From positions 40,610,001 to 40,674,000 of the forward strand of contig NC_058383.1 of NCBI RefSeq assembly GCF_018350175.1: a DNA stretch of 64,000 nt, in the 5' to 3' direction. The notes under the pieces were generated by a model. That model was not told where the DNA came from. It saw only the letters and a program-made list of their open reading frames with translations, and searched no databases. A program made the translations under genes and the position numbers. The DNA is from Felis catus (taxonomy: Eukaryota). Below, piece by piece: positions 49,095 through 64,000 of this stretch; position 1 is the first letter of the stretch; the number at the start of each line of letters is the position of its first letter.

Positions 49095-52000
49095 ATGGGC
49101 CTAAGAGCAGGTGAGACTGCCCCCCCTCACAAAGGGGCACCGTGGACCCTCCGGGGGTGGTTCCCACGGCCGGCTCCTCTCAGGTGGCAGGACCATCTGT
49201 GGTCATAGGGACACAGGGAGCCCTGGGCAGACCCTTGACGGATGCCCCCACCAGGCAGGCACAGCCCTGCCGGGGGGGGGGGGTGTCAGCCGCTCATGGC
49301 CCATTCTGTTCCAGGTGCCCAGGTGAGCCCAGGCCTCGCCCTCCTCATGTGGCTCACCGCCCACTGCTCTTGTCCCCAGGCCCAGGGCTTCTCCCAGGGA
49401 GGGCTGGACGCCAGCAGGGCTGACCTGTGGGCCAGGTGAGTGCCAGCCCCTCCTGCAGTTCCAACCTACAGGTCACATCCTGGCAGCTGATCCCCTAGCA
49501 GGCGGTGGGGGGGGGGGGGGAGGAAGGTGTGGCTCCAGGGGCTGCACCTGACGGCCCAGGCGAGGCTGAGGCAGGGCTGCCCCCAGCACTCACCGACCTT
49601 GCCCCAAGGTGGCCCAGATCACCCAGTGTCCTGCATCATGTCCCAACCACACCAGAGTGGCCAAGAGTGGGTCCCCCAGGTTGTCGCAGCTGGGACTGGG
49701 GCCGCTGAACCCCTCACCTCTCGCACTGCTCTCCCGGCCAGAGTCCTCTCGGTTTCTTCCCCTGCCCCGAGGCTTGGCTGCTCTCTCAGGTCCCAAGCAC
49801 TGTTCAGAGGGCTCATGCATGGGCTCAGCCACCCTTCCCTTCCCTGGGAGTCAGAGACCTCTCGTGGACCATCAATCACTGACCAATCAGTGTGCTGATT
49901 AGGCAGGGCTGGAGACCCAGGCTGAAGTCCCGTGAGATGCCCTCCCCACACACGGATTTTAGTAGACGCACAGCCTGCGGAGCACTCAGCTAGGAACCAG
50001 CCTGGCCGTGGTGACACCGCAGATGCCCGGACCACATCTGCTCCAAACACTCAGCTGTTGCTGGGGCCGGGGAGCTCACTCGAACTCGGAGCCCCCTGGG
50101 ACGGGGCCTCGGGCGGGAGCACAGACCCAGAGTCCAGGCCGGGGCCATACTGAAGCCCTGCTCATCGCCTGGAGCCCGGGGCCAACTACGTGCCACAGGG
50201 GCACAAGTGCGTGCCGAGCGGAGCCGCGGTCTTGCCTGCGCCCAGGCGCCACCAGCCACCCTTCCTGTGTCTCAGCCCCTGGGTGTTGGGGAGCTGACCT
50301 CCCTCCTGTGCACTGCAGTCCGGGCTACACCGCCCCCCCCCACTCACCGCCTGCCTCCTTTCTGCCCAGTGCCAACGCCTCCCTCCTGCACAGCTTCTGG
50401 TGCCAGCCGGCCAGCCAGCTGCCCCGGGACCAGCTCTCCGCTCTCATCAGGGCCATGGCGACTCGCCGGGTCCTCCTCAGAGCCTGGCAGGTGAATGGCT
50501 GTGGCGGATGGGTGCAGGCTGGGGTGCTGACGGCAGGGGTGTCCCCAGCGCAGGACACGGGCCAGCGGGGGGCCTGCGGGGCCGGGTGGGGGCTAGCTCA
50601 CGGTGGGGGAGCACTGGGGCCCTGCGGGAGACACCGCCAGCGTCACCACCGCCTGAGGGGTGTCGCTTCAGTAAACCCCTATGCGACAGGGGGTCTGGCC
50701 CTCCAGAGGTTGGGCTTTCCCTCCCCTGAGTGATTCTCTGCTGCTGCCCACTTTGGATCATTTCTAGGGCCTTCTCCACCAATTACCTGCAGACCCCCTG
50801 CCTTCTGTTCTTGTGTTCGGGTGAGGGCTTATCCGCCAGGCCTGCGCTGGCCGCTCCTCCCTCCATCTGTCACGCAGCGTCCCCCTTTGGGACGGGTTCT
50901 GGGCCCTGGGCAGATCCCCCAGCCTGCTGGCCTCTCCCTGCGACCCACCACTGATCCAAGCATTGCCCGTCCCTGAGTTTAAAGAAACGGAAGGATGAAA
51001 AGCTACCATTTTGTCTCTTTATAATATTGGTATGAAATTAGTACTGAACCTAGAACGACCTCAAAGTGAGTCAAGCAACACAAGAAACCCAGGCAGGCGG
51101 CCCTGAGATAAATGCCTCTGAGTCACCGTAGTGCAGGGGGGCCCAGGGTGGGGAGGACTCTCGGGCTGGCCTTGACACATCCCGAGAGCGGCTGAGACGG
51201 GAAGACGACGTGATGTCCAGGTGAGGCGGGGTCCAGGCAGGCAGGGAAGGGGCCGCCCTGAGGGAGAGGGTGACGTGGCAGAGAGAAGGGGGCCGGGGGA
51301 GCCCCGGGCTGGGCGAGAGAGTGACCCATCACCGCCCTGCCCAGCTCAGCTGCCTGGCCAACCTGGCCACGCTGCACGGCCTCCAGGACGACTTTGAGCT
51401 CCACCCGCCGGACCTGCTGCTTTTCTACAAGTGAGTGCCCGCTCTCGGCCCGAAACCCGGGCGGCACAGGCTGAGCGTGCCTCCTTTGGAGTCCCGGGGA
51501 CCCCAGCTCCCCAGGGATATCCGGGCCGCCCCAGAGCACCGTTGGCCGGTCCCCACCCTCCCGACAGCCCCCCAACCCTCCCGCAGCCTGACGCAGGTGA
51601 GGGAAGCCGACTGCCGGGCCTTCACCCACCGTGCCGCCCAGGGGGACACGGAGCTGCTGGCCAACCTGCCGGACCAGAGGGCCGCCCTGCAGCGTGTGGC
51701 CTTGGCCTGCCTGGTAGGCACCGCGGGCGGGCCCCGGGCGGGCCGGGTGGACCGGAAGTGGGGCCAGGCTCACGCTGACCTGCCGTCCCGTAGGGAGGAC
51801 CCCGCTTGCGGCTCAGCGCCTCTGACCTGCTGCTCCTCGGGGTCCTGGTGTGCGACATGGACGCGTCCAGCATCGTGGCCGCGGACCCCCGTGTGCTGCA
51901 GAATCTGCAGCGCTGCCATCGGCTGACCGCCCCCCAGCAAGCCGCCCTCAACACGCTGCTGGCCAGTGGGGGGACCACGCTTGGGTAGGCAGGGCCGGAA

Positions 52001-56322: not shown

Positions 56323-59300
56323 TCAGTTCGGGACCAAAGCCCACAGCAGAGTCGGGACCGCAGTGAGCACAGGTCCGGGTCGGAGCAGGCGGACGCCCCC
56401 TGAGAGGGCCTCTGTACAGAGGGAGTGACTCAGACGCCCCATGCCGCTCCGCTCCGACCCCACCCAGCCGGCCACCCTGGCCCACCTCGGAAGCTGAGGT
56501 CCACGACCAGGTAGCCATTGGGGATGCCGCCTCGGAGCCCCAGGCCCAGACTGTCCAGGTCCTCCTGCCGCTGCCGTGAGATCCAATCCCGCACGGGGCT
56601 GCTCTCCCGCGCCGCCTTCAGGCCCACCAGGTTCGGACCCAGAAGGTTTCGGACCTCGGCAACGGTCAGCGGCTGCCAGAACCCCCAGGGGGCGGTCAAG
56701 GGCGCCCTGCCTCACCCACAGAAGGCTGCCGGGCTCTGCTCCGCCCAAACCTCCCGGCGCTTCCCTTCCCGGGCGCACAGAACCTGCCTTGGCCGCTCCA
56801 GGATTCGGCGCTCGCCCCGGCGCGAAGACAGCCCCTGCCTGGCCCCGCCCCTCCCGTGCCCCCGCCCCTGGGCCCCGCCCCGTGTGGCCCCGCCCCCGCG
56901 GCCCCGCCCCGCGGCCGTACCACCACTGCCTCAGGCCGCAGCGTCCGGAATGCGGCCAAGTCCATGCTTATGTTCTGACGGCTGAGAGCCCGCAGGTCCT
57001 CCGTGGGGGCCCCACCTGACCGCGGGGAGAGGGCCCCAAGCGTGAGACCTCGCAACAGCCCCCAGTCTTATCCCCTTCCCGGAGGCTGCAAGAAGCCGTC
57101 CTCCTTCCCCAAGATTCCCTTTTCCTAAGGACTTCCTGGGCCCCGGGTTCCCCTGGTGCCCATCTGACCCTCAGGGTGCGTGGAGAGGCCGGAGGTGGCC
57201 GCGGGAGCATCTGGGTCGGCTCAGAACTCACAGGGTCTCCACCTACACACACTCGTAAGGGCGCAGGGCACAGTGACCACCAGTCACACCAGCAGTGGCC
57301 TAGTGAGGCAGGAACTGGCGGCCCCTGCGTGGGGAACCTTGGCCATCACCGCCCCCTGGGTGTACCCTGGCTCACCCAGGTAGAGCTTCATCTTCTCGAA
57401 GTATTCAGACCCGCTCATGTTCTGGAAGGCAAGGCGGGCCTTGCGATAGAGTACGTCCATCTGGGCCGGACGGCATGCATCCAGATCCGGGGGCCGGGCT
57501 GCCCTGGAGAGGCAGCAGGGCCGGGACAGTGAGCCCAGGGCGCAGCGTGCCCACCACCCCCGGCGGACCTCTGGGACTCACCAAACAACGCTGTGGTGCA
57601 CTGACTCCAGCTGCTCAGGACTGAGGAAGCACAGGTACGTCGGATGGAAAGCGGCCAGTGTGTCCAGGGTGGCCTTGTCCAGCTGGCCCCCTCCCACCAG
57701 ATAGCGGGCAATCAGGGCAGCCACCTGTGGAAGGAGGCCACGGGTGCCTTGGGGCAAGGACCCACAATCCCCTGGGGTCTGCACGGCCTCACACCACCCG
57801 CTCCCTCCCTGTCACCTGAGCATCCATTTTGTGCCCTTTGCTGACTTCAAGAAGAGATTTCACGGTTTCCAGGGACATCACGTTCCACTTGTGGATGTCC
57901 TCGGGGGTGAGCTCAAGGAAGAAGTACCCGAGGTGCCGGACCAGGGACTCGGGGTACCCCTGTGGATAGAGCTGCCCGGGGAGGTGACTCGATGGATGGC
58001 TGGGGATGCTCCGGCGGGGTGGGCAGGTATGAGCCCCTCATGAACTACCTCGTCCAATTTGCGCTTAAAAACGCCCAGCTGCTGGTAGGTGAAGGGCACC
58101 ATGTTCACCCGGTCCATCTGAGCGGCCAGCAGGGCCCCATCTACACAGGCCTCCAGCTCCCAGGGCTCGTAGAAGACAAGGTTTTCATCCACCACACGGG
58201 CCCTCCGCTCTGGTGGGCAGGCTTTCTCTGCGGGGGCAGGCGGGGGATTGAGGGCTGGACGTCTCTTGTCAACCTCCTCCTCCCAAACCTCACGTAGACA
58301 GACCCTGGGCAATGCAGGACCCCCTCCAGGCCTCAGTTTACACATCAGCAGAATGGAGTGATTCTGTCCCTTCTCCGAGGTTGTCACCGTGGAGCAAGCC
58401 GAGCGGCCAGAAAGGGCCACGGGTATGGGCAGGTGTGAGCCCACGACCCTACCCCATCCCCGGGTCTCTTGACAGCCAGTGGGACAGGGTTTCCCACTTA
58501 CTCTCTGTGTCCCGCCGGTCCCTCGGGAGGAGGACGGTCAGCTCAGGCCGCTGCCAAGACAGGTCCCGGGAGGTGCCTTGCAGCCAGGGGGTCATGACAC
58601 CCTGAGGACAGAGCAGGGCTGTAGCTGAGCTGTGCATGGCCAGGGGTCCGAGGCCCCCTACCTGGGGCCAGACACCTTCCTCTGTCTCCCCAGAGGGAAC
58701 TTACCGGTCGTGAGTCTGCAGCCCGGACCCTGGAAGGTAGCACCCACCCTGCAGGGAAAGAGCATAAGGCTGGAAGGGACAGCCTGGGATTCCTGGGGTG
58801 CCTGCCACCGGCCCCCACTGTGTGTAGGAAGGAGGCAAAGCTGCTCCCCCAACACTGTGCTCCCCCCACAGACTTAGGCCCCTGCACCCCATGATGTCAC
58901 AGCCCACCCCACCCCAAGGGGCCCAGGCGTCCCTCATCCTCCTCCTAAGCCTTCACTGCTCCGGTCGAGGAGTTACCCTCTCCGTGGACACTCTCAGCTT
59001 GGCCTGAGCGCCCATCACTGCCCTGGCTCAGCTGCTAATGCTGCAGGGCGTGGAGGTCCAGCAGGGGGGCCGCCACAGTCACCTCTGGGGACAGAGACAC
59101 GGCTGACAGCCTGCCCAGGTCTAGGGCACCTACCTACAACTTGGGGCACCCATCTGGAACTCAGGGCACCTGTTCAGGACTCAGGGCACCCGCCGAGATT
59201 CGGAGCACCTGCCAGGACTCGGGCCACCTGCCCAGAACTTGGAACAGCTGCCTGACCTCAGGGCACCTGCCAAGGATGGGGGAGGGGGCACTGCCCACAG

Positions 59301-59486
59301 GCAGGGAGGAGGTGTGGGGCAATGAGAGCCTTTCTTGAGGCCCCTCAGCTGTTTGGGCCCCCACTACTTTGCAGCAGCACCCCCCCCACCACATTACTCA
59401 CCAAGGCTGAGAAGCAGGAGCAGGAGGCTACAGTGGGTGGGGGTCCCACGGGACCCCAGGGGAGGCAGAGCAGCCTGCAAGGCCAT
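56323..59486 (-). CDS. MSLN: Mesothelin (short form lacking the MPF body), 10 coding exons, 401 aa
   Basis: Exons (-): 59486-59402, 58748-58705, 58601-58502, 58227-58049, 57971-57816, 57724-57582, 57503-57376, 57015-56921, 56672-56486, 56411-56323 (1206 nt, phases consistent). Signal peptide MALQAALPPLGSRGTPTHCSLLLLLLSLGW, furin site RDRR, ACPP..FYEPWELEACVD, GGAPTEDL, GGIPNGYLV, hydrophobic GPI-type C-terminus. Confidence 0.95.
59120..59275. repeat. ~20-bp minisatellite (8 degenerate units, core actcagggcacctg) in the first coding intron of MSLN
   Basis: cacc(tg) cores at 59127, 59147, 59167, 59187, 59206, 59225, 59245 and 59264. Confidence 0.8.
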
Positions 59487-60962
59487 TGTCTGTGGAGGAG
59501 AGCCGCTCTGATATCCCCACCGTTTGGGTCAACAACCCCCCCATCCCCCTGACTACCCCCCCCCGCACCCCTCCTTTCCCCTCCAACCCACCTGCCTCAC
59601 CCTGGGCCAGTGCAGGGCCTTATGAGGCTGGACGGTCTCAGAGCCCCACACCGAACCTTCTCAGGCCCCTACAGGTGGCGTCTCTGCGGCCTCCAGCCCT
59701 GCTCTCAGGACTGACCTGTCCACCTGACCCGCCCCCTCCGGGAAGCTGGCCCCTCCTGCAGGGGGTGTTGAGTCGGAGTCAGCCAGGCCCCCAGCAGTGA
59801 GAGCCCAGGCGGGCAACTGGTTAGGGCAGGGCTGCCTCTGGCCCAGGCTGGCCTGATTCCACATTTGCACCAGAGCTGGGGATAGATTTGAGTGACCCCC
59901 CCCCCCCCAACCTGGGGCGTGGCCACTCTCTCCTCCCCAGCCTCCTGCTCCTGGCACCTGCCAGGCTTGTGCAAACCCAGGGCCCGGGTGGACAAGGCCA
60001 CTGAGGCCCACCTGCCCTCCTGCTTTCTCTCCTGAGGTCCCTCCCAAGACAGAGGCCTCAGTGTCTTGTGGGTACAACACCCCTTCTTACCTGCCAGTCC
60101 CTTGGGTGAGGCAGTGGGTGGATAGGGATTCTGGGGTGGTTCCCCTGCATTTTTAGAGTGGGGTTCAGGGGGCCTTGCCAGCCAGTGTGGGGTGTGGAAG
60201 TGGGTGGAGAGCCGCTTTCCAGGGAGTATTGTCCCAGGTAGGGTGGGGACCTGCGAGAGACCAAACCAGTGTAGGCCAAACTACATTCACCCCTCCCAGG
60301 GAGGGAGGCTGCCCGCCCTGGGCGTGGTGAGCGGAGACATCCCCTCCCCGCAAGCCTGCCTCCGTGCAAGCCTGCGTCAGCCCCACCCGGGGTCAAAAAT
60401 GAGGGGGGCGCACTCACCCATCAGCAACGCCTTTCAGCGGGGCGGGCGAGGAGCCTAGCGCTGGGGGTGTGTCCTGGGAAGTGGCCCCAGGTGAGCCTTC
60501 TCCCCTCCCCCCCTCCAGGTTCCAGGGGTGGCTCGAGAAAACCAGACCCCCAGACCAGTAAACGGGCAGTGGAGTGAGGGAGGACCCCACCCCTTGGATG
60601 GGTGAGGCCAGGTGGGCCCCTCCCCAGGCCCATGTAACCAGAGAACCCCCAGCACCTCAGATGGGGCTTCCCGGGAGCCCCTGCAGGCCACCTGGGCCCT
60701 GGAATCTACATCCCTCACATCTCCACCCCCAGACCCACCCCCGGAAGGCCAGGTTGGGGCCACAGAGGCACTTCCGCCGTCAGGTCTGCAGCTTCCGAAG
60801 TGGCCTGAGCTCGACCTGCAGTTTCAAGTCTGTTCCCGCCAGTCTGGAGTGCCCATGTTTGTGTGTGACGTGGAAACAGTCCCCAGCAGAGCTCTGTCTC
60901 CCTCTCTCCCTCTGCGAGCCTGCTCTCGAGCCTCCTTTTCTGTCCTGCATCGTTCCCTGGGC

Positions 60963-60993
<31 letters not shown>

Positions 60994-62377: not shown

Positions 62378-63090
62378 GACACCGGCGAGGACGCGGAGAG
62401 AGAGGATCTCTTTGGCACTGCTGGTGGGAATGCTGGCTGGTGCGGCCACTCTGCAAAACGGTATGGAGGCTCCTCAAAAAATTAAAGGTAGAACTACCCT
62501 ACGACCCAGCAATGGCACTGCTAGGCATTTATCCAAGGGATACAAGTGTGCTGTTTCGAAGGACACGTGCACCCCCATGTTTATAGCAGCACTATCGACA
62601 ACAGCCAAAGTATGGAAAGAGCCCAAATGTCCAGCGATGGATGAATGGAAAAGAAGATGTGGAATATATACACGATGGAGTATTACTCAGCAATCAAAAA
62701 GAATGAAATCTTGCCATTTGCAACTACGTGGATGGAACTGGAGGGTATTATGCTCAGTGAAATTAGTCAGAGAAAGACAGATATCATAGAACTTCACTCA
62801 TATGAGGACTTTAAGACACAAAACAGATGAACACAAGGGAAGAGAAACAAAAATAATATAAAAACAGGGAGGGGGACAAAACACAAGAGACTCTTAAAGA
62901 CAGAAAACACACTGAGGGTTGTTGGAGGGTTGTGGGGGGGGGGATGGGCCAAATTAGTGATGGGCATTAAGGAGGACACTCGTTGGGTTGAGCACTGGGT
63001 GTTATACACAGGGAATGAATTACTGAAATCATTATTGCACTATATGCTAACTAACTTAGATGTAAATTTAAAAATTAATTAAAAGAAAGG
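62378..63090 (+). mobile_element. Carnivore L1 3' end (ORF2 C-terminus, 3' UTR, A-rich tail)
   Basis: TCTPMFIAALSTTAKVWKEPKCP and IYTMEYYSAIKKNEILPFATTWMELEGIMLSEISQ in the ORF track. Confidence 0.95.
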
Positions 63091-63123
63091 AAGAAAGACA
63101 AAGACAAAAGAAAGTTCCATCCA

Positions 63124-63488
63124 GGGGTGCCTGGCTGGCTCAATTTGTTAAGCGACTAACTTCAGCTCGGCAGCTCAGTCATAATCTCGCGGTTCATGAG
63201 TTCCAGCCCTGCATCGGGCTCTCTGCTGGTCAGCACAGAGCCCACTTCAGATCCTCTGTCTCTCTCTCTCACTCTGCCCCTCCCCTGCTCTCCCTCTCTC
63301 TGTCTCCTAAAAGTAAAAATAAATATTAAAGGGGTGCCTGGGTGGCTCAGTCAGTTAAGCGTCCAACTTCGGCTCAGGCCATGATCTCGCAGTTGATGAG
63401 TTCGAGCCCCACATCAGGCTCTGTGCTGACAGCTCGGAGCCTGGAGCCTGCTTCAGATTCTGTGTCTCCCTCTCTCTCTGCCCCTTCC
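63124..63488 (+). mobile_element. Two tandem CanSINEs (63124-63330; 63331-63488, truncated by the gap)
   Basis: Two ggggtgcctgg(c/g)tggctca heads, each followed by a SINE body. Confidence 0.9.
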
Positions 63489-63658
63489 NNNNNNNNNNNN
63501 NNNNNNNNNNNNNNNNNNNNNNNNNNNNNNNNNNNNNNNNNNNNNNNNNNNNNNNNNNNNNNNNNNNNNNNNNNNNNNNNNNNNNNNNNNNNNNNNNNNN
63601 NNNNNNNNNNNNNNNNNNNNNNNNNNNNNNNNNNNNNNNNNNNNNNNNNNNNNNNNNN
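63489..63658. other. Assembly gap (170 N)
   Basis: Run of N. Confidence 1.
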
Positions 63659-64000
63659 ACTGAAACATTCCGGACAAATCGTAAAAACCAAGTCCCTGAG
63701 GGTCCTGGGGAAGGAAGGAAAGCTAGCAGAATTTGGAGGGGAATTGACACTGACGGAGGAGAGCAGCAGGGAGGAGGTCTCCCTCTGCGTATGTAGCTTT
63801 GCCCTGAAGACACTCAGAGGCAGGGCCCCCGTGATCGGGCTCCAGCAGAGATCCCACCATCTTTCTGGCTGAAGGAGGAAGGAGCCTAGGATTAGCAGAT
63901 CCCAGAGAAAAAGTGAAGAATTCTGAAAGAGAGCCTGGGGAGGGGACCCCAAATTCTGTGTTTGAACTCTACCCAGGTCTCTTGCTGACCCCTGAATCAT

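What the first reader, a model, noticed from the sequence alone, without database searches (positions are those of the whole stretch)
58502..58748. Mesothelin gene has lost the entire MPF (megakaryocyte-potentiating factor) exon block but remains in frame
Seen: the exon encoding GWVLPSRVRAADSRP (58748-58705, phase 0) is followed after only a 103-bp GT-AG intron (58704-58602) by the exon encoding GVMTPWLQ...PRDRRDTE. The CDS is 401 aa. Known: human and rodent mesothelin is a ~620-aa precursor in which ~220 residues over several exons lie between these two exons and form most of the secreted ~31-kDa MPF. Inference: a clean phase-0/phase-0 multi-exon deletion removed MPF while keeping the signal peptide, furin site and GPI-anchored mature mesothelin. 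This species would therefore make no classical MPF from MSLN, which matters for veterinary biomarkers and for MPF function. The loss may be shared with other laurasiatherians; I cannot check that here.
Basis: partly seen in the sequence, partly recalled or inferred. Interest (0 to 1): 0.85.

Follow-up and report, generated by a model that had tools for sequence, protein, structure and literature searches.

The report
Cat mesothelin gene lacking MPF exons
The domestic cat's mesothelin gene really does lack the exons for megakaryocyte-potentiating factor and stays in frame, but this is an ancient deletion shared by carnivores, ungulates, whales, bats and pangolins, published in 2011 and already annotated, so it is real but not new.

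Summary
On the minus strand, ten GT-AG exons (59486-56323) add up to 1206 nt, which is 401 codons plus a stop. Every exon translation occurs exactly and in order in RefSeq "mesothelin isoform X2 [Felis catus]". Exon 2 (58748-58705) and exon 3 (58601-58502) are separated by a 103-bp intron.

They correspond to residues 1-43 and about 268-302 of a 642-aa lemur mesothelin, so about 223 residues, the core of MPF, are missing. No relic of them exists in the MSLN locus. The only MPF-like signal in the 64-kb window is in the neighbouring MSLNL gene on the plus strand.

Kim and Hahn 2011 (PMID 21132261, as cited and summarised in PMC11417096) described this exon deletion for Laurasiatherian mammals, and PMC11417096 confirmed it by cDNA in dog.

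About 100 laurasiatherian mesothelin models from five orders show the same exon 2|exon 3 junction and no MPF. Primates, rodents, hare, colugos and marsupials keep MPF.

- Carnivores keep the furin site (RDRR), but bats and pig have lost it.
- Several afrotherian and tree-shrew gene models show the same junction; this is unresolved.

The parts
60091..60150 (-). Upstream 5' exon with an in-frame upstream ATG, used in RefSeq cat isoform X1 (422 aa). It adds 21 residues ahead of the conserved start.
   Evidence: tblastn of P0172 residues 1-20 gives 20/20 identity at 60150-60091.
59402..59486 (-). MSLN coding exon 1: conserved start codon and signal-peptide region. 85 nt, ends in phase 1.
   Evidence: Pfam PF06060 profile 1-29. 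Exact match to P0177 residues 1-28.
58749..59401 (-). Intron 1 (653 bp). It holds a 19-bp tandem repeat at 59159-59272 and no MPF-like coding relic.
58705..58748 (-). MSLN exon 2 (44 nt, ends in phase 0), the last exon before the deletion.
   Evidence: With exon 1 it aligns to residues 1-41 of lemur mesothelin P0013.
58602..58704 (-). The 103-bp GT-AG intron that stands where the MPF exon block lies in long-form species. It is presumably a fusion of two ancestral introns.
   Evidence: Sequence; splice sites. That it is a fusion is inferred, following Kim and Hahn 2011 as summarised in PMC11417096.
58502..58601 (-). MSLN exon 3 (100 nt, starts in phase 0): the tail of the pro-region plus the furin site.
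   Evidence: Pfam profile 265-302, E 5e-8. It aligns to lemur residues 268-302.
58512..58523 (-). Codons for the R-D-R-R furin-type motif (residues 70-73 of the 401-aa protein).
   Evidence: Sequence. The motif is conserved in all nine carnivore models checked.
58049..58227 (-). MSLN exon 4, the start of mature mesothelin. It carries the Y..W..E residues that bind MUC16/CA125 in man.
   Evidence: Pfam profile 301-365, E 3e-29. PDB mesothelin chains 4f3f, 7ued and 8cxc at E about 1e-23.
57816..57971 (-). MSLN exon 5.
57582..57724 (-). MSLN exon 6.
57376..57503 (-). MSLN exon 7.
56921..57015 (-). MSLN exon 8.
56486..56672 (-). MSLN exon 9.
56323..56411 (-). MSLN exon 10: the conserved Ser-Gly of the GPI attachment region, a hydrophobic tail and the stop codon.
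   Evidence: The GPI signal itself is inferred from conservation and was not run through a predictor.
50362..51982 (+). N-terminal, MPF-like domain exons of the paralog MSLNL, the only MPF-like coding sequence in the window.
   Evidence: A profile HMM of 67 MPF regions gives colinear hits at model positions 15-59, 54-85, 92-129 and 134-193, best E 9e-7. tblastn E 7e-5. Pfam profile 178-237 weakly.

Best explanation
This is the domestic cat MSLN gene in its normal laurasiatherian form. In an ancestor of Laurasiatheria, a genomic deletion between the intron after exon 2 and the intron before the exon beginning G-V-M-T-P-W removed all exons for about 223 residues, the body of MPF. Both flanking exons border the gap in phase 0, so the fused short intron (103 bp in cat) splices cleanly. 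The gene encodes a 401-aa precursor with these parts: a signal peptide, a residual pro-peptide of about 35 residues, an RDRR furin motif, a complete mature mesothelin domain and a GPI-type tail. Shown here: the exon structure, the absence of MPF coding sequence, identity with the RefSeq cat model, and the same junction in five mammalian orders. Inferred: that the event was one deletion by joining of the two introns, that furin still cuts in cat, and that only a small peptide is released instead of a 31-kDa MPF.
For: The exon translations are exactly identical to RefSeq Felis catus isoform X2. Exons 1 and 2 align to lemur residues 1-41 and exon 3 to 268-302. Neither tblastn with long forms, Pfam nor a 67-sequence MPF profile HMM over all six frames finds MPF sequence in the MSLN locus. 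A blastp of the lemur MPF region hits every long primate, rodent and colugo form and a marsupial, but none of about 100 laurasiatherian models. A 5.8-billion-protein search with the MPF region returned 74 proteins, all from primates, colugos, rodents, a hare and opossum, and no laurasiatherian. The same exon 2|exon 3 junction is seen in Carnivora, Pholidota, Perissodactyla, Cetartiodactyla and Chiroptera. Assembled contigs of 1.3-1.4 kb encode 399-401-aa proteins, including P0185, which differs from tiger and jaguar models at only 2 residues. The cat gene spans 3.2 kb, so these contigs must be spliced mRNA. In the literature, PMC11417096 reports dog cDNA lacking MPF and cites Kim and Hahn 2011 for cow, pig, horse, panda, hedgehog and dog.
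Against: So the single-event reading and the breakpoint rest on protein models and on the cited paper, which is not held in the library. Short models with the same junction also occur outside Laurasiatheria (elephant, tenrec, elephant shrew, tree shrew, one titi monkey model). This shows that gene predictors can produce this junction by skipping exons, or that the history is more complex than one deletion.
Confidence: 0.95

Rival explanations
1. Assembly artefact: a collapsed or misjoined contig dropped several kilobases containing the MPF exons from this cat assembly.
For: The locus is 62-73% G+C, a composition that short-read assemblies often lose. No reads could be checked.
Against: There is no N or gap in the gene. 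Both splice sites of the 103-bp intron are canonical. An identical junction appears in independent assemblies of at least 12 felid species and in four other orders, and in mRNA-sized contigs. Dog cDNA agrees.
Confidence: 0.02
2. This is a truncated duplicate or paralog, and a full-length MSLN with MPF lies elsewhere in the cat genome.
For: Only 64 kb were examined here. Mesothelin-family paralogs do exist: MSLNL lies next door, and an earlier scan note mentions a possible family member beyond the window's end.
Against: The gene sits tail-to-tail with MSLNL. It is what RefSeq annotates as cat mesothelin. A search of 5.8 billion proteins with the MPF region found no felid or other laurasiatherian protein.
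Confidence: 0.02
3. The MPF-less form arose more than once, or predates Laurasiatheria as a polymorphism or a skipped-exon isoform. On this reading the cat junction is not the product of one laurasiatherian deletion.
For: Elephant, tenrec and elephant-shrew models, a tree-shrew model and one titi monkey model join the same two exons. None of six afrotherian models exceeds 512 aa. No afrotherian or xenarthran appeared in the MPF-region search, although opossum at 49% identity did.
Against: The aardvark model still carries the last MPF exon (lemur MPF-fragment positions 197-214, i.e. lemur residues 240-257, match its residues 7-24). The pika model keeps part of MPF while a hare has all of it, so short models are often incomplete predictions from gapped, G+C-rich assemblies. 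The cited 2011 study assigns the deletion to Laurasiatheria.
Confidence: 0.12

Closest known systems
Laurasiatherian MSLN exon deletion (Kim DS, Hahn Y, Int J Mol Med 2011;27:289, PMID 21132261; known here only through its citation and summary in PMC11417096)
   Same: The same gene and the same missing MPF portion. The same kind of mechanism is proposed (joining of two introns). The same clade: cow, pig, horse, panda, hedgehog and dog are listed, and cat is a carnivore like dog and panda.
   Different: From what I could read, cat is not named among the species. This report adds many more species (felids, seals, mustelids, hyena, camels, hippo, whales, rhino, about 20 bats, pangolin) and looks at how the furin motif fared afterwards.
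Canine mesothelin (PMC11417096, Front Vet Sci 2024)
   Same: A precursor without MPF but with a signal peptide, a furin motif, conserved Tyr/Trp/Glu MUC16-binding residues and a GPI site. RefSeq models have an upstream in-frame ATG.
   Different: In dog the mature part of the transcript was amplified and sequenced (exons 5-8). For cat there is only the RefSeq model, plus a Panthera-like mRNA-sized contig.
MPF/mesothelin precursor of Euarchontoglires (about 620-640 aa; e.g. lemur P0013, beaver P0131)
   Same: Exons 1-2 and everything from the exon before the furin site to the GPI tail are orthologous. Exon 4 is about 70% identical to the lemur protein by tblastn.
   Different: About 223 residues (lemur 44-266), which form nearly all of secreted MPF, are absent in cat.
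MSLNL (mesothelin-like), the neighbouring paralog at about 49.1-55.8 kb on the plus strand
   Same: The same Pfam family (PF06060). It lies tail-to-tail with MSLN.
   Different: MSLNL still has an N-terminal MPF-like domain. It is only distantly similar to MSLN and is not a source of classical MPF.

Membership tests
Mesothelin (Pfam PF06060), MSLN orthologue | Significant match to PF06060 over the mature domain | tested here: met
   Six exon pieces score above the 25.8-bit cut-off, with E from 5e-8 to 3e-29, covering profile positions 265-596.
Mesothelin (Pfam PF06060), MSLN orthologue | Identity with the annotated MSLN of the species | tested here: met
   All ten exon translations are found exactly and in order in P0177, RefSeq mesothelin isoform X2 of Felis catus.
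Mesothelin (Pfam PF06060), MSLN orthologue | Furin-type R-X-K/R-R site ahead of the mature domain | tested here: met
   RDRR at residues 70-73, codons 58523-58512. Cleavage itself was not tested.
Mesothelin (Pfam PF06060), MSLN orthologue | N-terminal signal peptide and C-terminal GPI signal | tested here: inconclusive
   Exon 1 matches profile positions 1-29 and has a Leu-rich core. The tail is hydrophobic after a conserved Ser-Gly. No signal-peptide or GPI predictor was available.
Mesothelin (Pfam PF06060), MSLN orthologue | Residues that bind MUC16/CA125 in human mesothelin (Tyr318, Trp321, Glu324) | tested here: met
   The alignment of exon 4 to PDB chain 4f3f_C shows Y, W and E conserved. 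The residue list is from PMC11417096.
MPF-deleted MSLN of Laurasiatheria (Kim and Hahn 2011) | No coding sequence for the MPF core (about residues 44-266 of long forms) | tested here: met
   No hit in the MSLN locus with tblastn, Pfam or an MPF profile HMM.
MPF-deleted MSLN of Laurasiatheria (Kim and Hahn 2011) | The same exon-exon junction as other laurasiatherians | tested here: met
   The junction ...A-A-D-x-x-x | G-V-M-T-P-W-L-Q is shared by models from five orders.
MPF-deleted MSLN of Laurasiatheria (Kim and Hahn 2011) | Orthologous DNA breakpoint in the fused intron across species | not testable with these tools
MPF-deleted MSLN of Laurasiatheria (Kim and Hahn 2011) | Transcripts that use the junction | tested here: inconclusive
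   mRNA-sized contigs encode the 399-401-aa form in a Panthera-like felid and in bats, and there is dog cDNA. Cat reads could not be examined.

The most novel reading that the evidence does not exclude
Loss of the MPF exons may not be confined to Laurasiatheria. Elephant, tenrec, elephant-shrew and tree-shrew mesothelin models join the very same two exons. If that is true in their DNA, the same intron pair was deleted repeatedly, or an old polymorphism sorted unevenly near the root of placental mammals. After the loss the furin site became dispensable in some lineages (bats RALQ, pig RPQG) but stayed strictly conserved in carnivores (RDRR). That conservation hints that the leftover pro-peptide of about 35 residues, or its removal, still matters in cats and dogs.
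Probability: 0.15. Interest if true: 0.45.

Novelty: already known. Interest (0 to 1): 0.15.

Why it matters
The practical point is for veterinary work. Assays for serum MPF, or antibodies to the N-terminal part of the human precursor, cannot work in cats, dogs or livestock. Assays for mature or soluble mesothelin can, as the dog study already argues. The deletion is also a natural knockout of MPF across a whole superorder, which fits the lack of a platelet phenotype in Msln-knockout mice reported in the dog paper's discussion. None of this is new. The only points that may go beyond the literature I could read are the uneven survival of the furin site and the unresolved short models in Afrotheria and tree shrew.

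Tried and rejected
- **DNA from other species:** No orthologous DNA and no mRNA contig could be fetched, so the breakpoint in the 103-bp intron could not be mapped against an outgroup.
- **The 2011 paper:** Kim and Hahn 2011 is not held in the library. It is known here only through PMC11417096.
- **Global alignment:** a MAFFT alignment of short and long forms misplaced the short N-termini against the interior of the long forms. I discarded it in favour of local alignments of single exon groups.
- **Joined model:** the spliced CDS was never joined or sent to any search. Exons were searched one by one by reference, and the frame was checked from exon lengths, phases and per-exon translations.
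- **Relics of MPF exons:** none were found in intron 1, the 103-bp intron or the 3 kb upstream.
- **Literature on cat:** a search for feline mesothelin found nothing specific.

Full report
**What is in the sequence.** On the minus strand, one search shows an acceptor at 58750-58749 followed by a 44-nt exon (58748-58705). A gtaagt donor follows, then a 103-bp intron with a pyrimidine tract and a cag acceptor (58704-58602). Next comes a 100-nt exon (58601-58502) followed by another gtaagt donor.

Guided by felid protein models, I placed all ten coding exons:
- E1 59486-59402
- E2 58748-58705
- E3 58601-58502
- E4 58227-58049
- E5 57971-57816
- E6 57724-57582
- E7 57503-57376
- E8 57015-56921
- E9 56672-56486
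- E10 56323-56411 (minus strand, ending in the stop)

All introns run GT-AG. The lengths sum to 1206 nt, 401 codons plus a stop, and no exon has an internal stop in its frame. I did not build or search a joined CDS. The frame was checked from lengths, phases and per-exon translations only.

**Identity of the gene and species.** Pfam PF06060 (Mesothelin) matches E1 at profile positions 1-29, E3 at 265-302 and E4-E9 at 301-596. Nothing matches positions 45-264. A phmmer search with E4 against 1.84 billion representatives returned mesothelins of 285-753 aa.

Cluster look-ups named them. Each of the ten exon translations occurs exactly, and at consecutive positions, in P0177, "mesothelin isoform X2 [Felis catus]", 401 aa. 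A second RefSeq isoform (422 aa) starts at an in-frame ATG in an upstream exon at 60150-60091.

**What is missing.** Local alignments place cat E1+E2 on residues 1-41 of the 642-aa mouse-lemur mesothelin (P0013), E3 on 268-302 and E4 on 306-362. About 223 residues (44-266) therefore have no counterpart. Three checks agree:
- tblastn of the lemur and colugo long forms against the whole window finds nothing for that stretch on the minus strand.
- A profile HMM built from 67 MPF regions, run with all filters off over every stop-free piece of all six frames, finds only four colinear hits on the plus strand at 50362-51982 (best E 9e-7).
- Those hits belong to the tail-to-tail paralog MSLNL.

The MSLN gene has no N.

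**Distribution.** A search of 5.8 billion proteins with a camel short form listed mesothelins of about 396-442 aa for nearly all laurasiatherian models: camels, hippo, whales, ruminants, pig, peccary, horse, rhino, cats, hyena, dogs, bears, seals, mustelids, many bats and pangolin. A few were longer or shorter isoforms or partial models. Primates and rodents gave about 618-654 aa.

A blastp of the lemur MPF region against all fetched proteins hit every long form and a marsupial protein, but no laurasiatherian one. The reverse search, using only the MPF region as query, returned 74 proteins. All came from primates, colugos, rodents, a hare and opossum. Presence in marsupials shows that the long form is ancestral and the short form is a loss.

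The N-termini of models from Carnivora, Pholidota, Perissodactyla, Cetartiodactyla and Chiroptera all show the same E2|E3 junction. Contigs of 1.3-1.4 kb from assembled public runs encode 399-401-aa proteins. One of them, P0185, is two residues away from the tiger and jaguar models. The cat gene spans 3.2 kb, so contigs of that size must be spliced mRNA.

**Literature.** PMC11417096 (Front Vet Sci 2024) sequenced dog mesothelin cDNA. It states that the precursor lacks the MPF portion. [quoted passage not shown] According to PMC11417096, that paper shows that cow, pig, horse, panda, hedgehog and dog lack MPF, hypothetically through non-homologous end-joining of introns. The 2011 paper itself is not held. 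No paper on feline mesothelin was found. The finding is thus correct but already known at the level of the clade, and annotated for the cat.

**How it works.** The shown steps are:
- The two exons flanking the gap meet in phase 0.
- The intron between them has canonical sites.
- The resulting frame is open.
- The mature domain is complete and about 70% identical to long forms (exon 4 against lemur).
- Solved structures of cleaved human mesothelin begin within a few residues of E4, so the mature part folds without MPF.

The inferred steps are these. After signal-peptide removal, a pro-peptide of roughly 35 residues remains. That estimate uses the boundary by analogy with the human protein, from my own knowledge. 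The pro-peptide ends in RDRR (residues 70-73, codons 58523-58512). Furin would release it in place of a 31-kDa MPF, and the rest is GPI-anchored.

**Two side observations.** First, the furin consensus R-X-K/R-R is kept in all nine carnivore models (RDRR) and in camel and hippo (RARR). It is reduced to R-X-X-R in horse, whales and one bat, and lost in pig (RPQG) and most bats (RALQ, RALL). All long forms checked keep R-F/L-R-R. This suggests relaxed constraint on cleavage once MPF was gone, except in carnivores.

Second, models from elephant, tenrec, elephant shrew, tree shrew and one titi monkey also join E2 directly to E3. All six afrotherian models are 349-512 aa. Against that, the aardvark model still has the last MPF exon, and the pika model keeps part of MPF while a hare has all of it. 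Many of these short models are therefore probably predictions that skip unassembled G+C-rich exons. I could not resolve this because the DNA could not be fetched.

**Limits.** As a result, no cat reads, no cross-species DNA and no breakpoint mapping were possible. No human contig was handled. The only human-derived items are PDB chain names and one printed alignment returned.

**Verdict.** This is a real feature, correctly read and correctly interpreted, but already known. Interest is low.

Noticed in passing
window 58512-58523 (-), compared with proteins P0060-P0193: The furin motif ahead of mature mesothelin is strictly kept in carnivores (RDRR) and in camel and hippo (RARR). It is lost in pig and most bats and weakened in horse and whales. 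All MPF-bearing species checked keep R-F/L-R-R.
   Followed up: partly
proteins P0250 (elephant), P0252 (tenrec), P0023 (elephant shrew), P0128 (tree shrew), P0142 (titi monkey), P0249 (aardvark): Non-laurasiatherian gene models also join exon 2 directly to exon 3, and all six afrotherian models are short. The aardvark model, however, retains the last MPF exon. Whether these are real deletions or skipped, unassembled exons is open.
   Followed up: partly
window 60091-60150 (-): An upstream 5' exon with an in-frame ATG gives RefSeq isoform X1 (422 aa), with 21 extra residues in front of the signal peptide. The dog models show the same pattern according to PMC11417096. It is probably 5' UTR rather than the true start.
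   Followed up: partly
window 50362-51982 and on to about 55400 (+): The paralog MSLNL lies tail-to-tail with MSLN and keeps an N-terminal MPF-like domain, shown by four colinear profile hits. This agrees with the earlier scan note s1-813995.
   Followed up: partly
window 59159-59272: A 19-bp tandem repeat of about six copies, 69% matching, lies inside MSLN intron 1.
   Followed up: no
window 60959-60989: A run of 31 G on the plus strand lies about 0.8 kb upstream of the 5' exon. On the minus strand it translates as a proline run.
   Followed up: no
window 62500-64000: G+C drops from about 65% to 36-47%, and there is a 170-base N run at 63489-63658.
   Followed up: no
proteins P0173, P0174, P0104 and relatives (356 aa): A recurrent 356-aa form in RefSeq and in mRNA-sized contigs is 45 residues shorter than the 401-aa protein. 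That difference fits a start at the Met inside exon 3 (residue 46). Such a product would lack the signal peptide, so these are probably 5'-incomplete transcripts.
   Followed up: no
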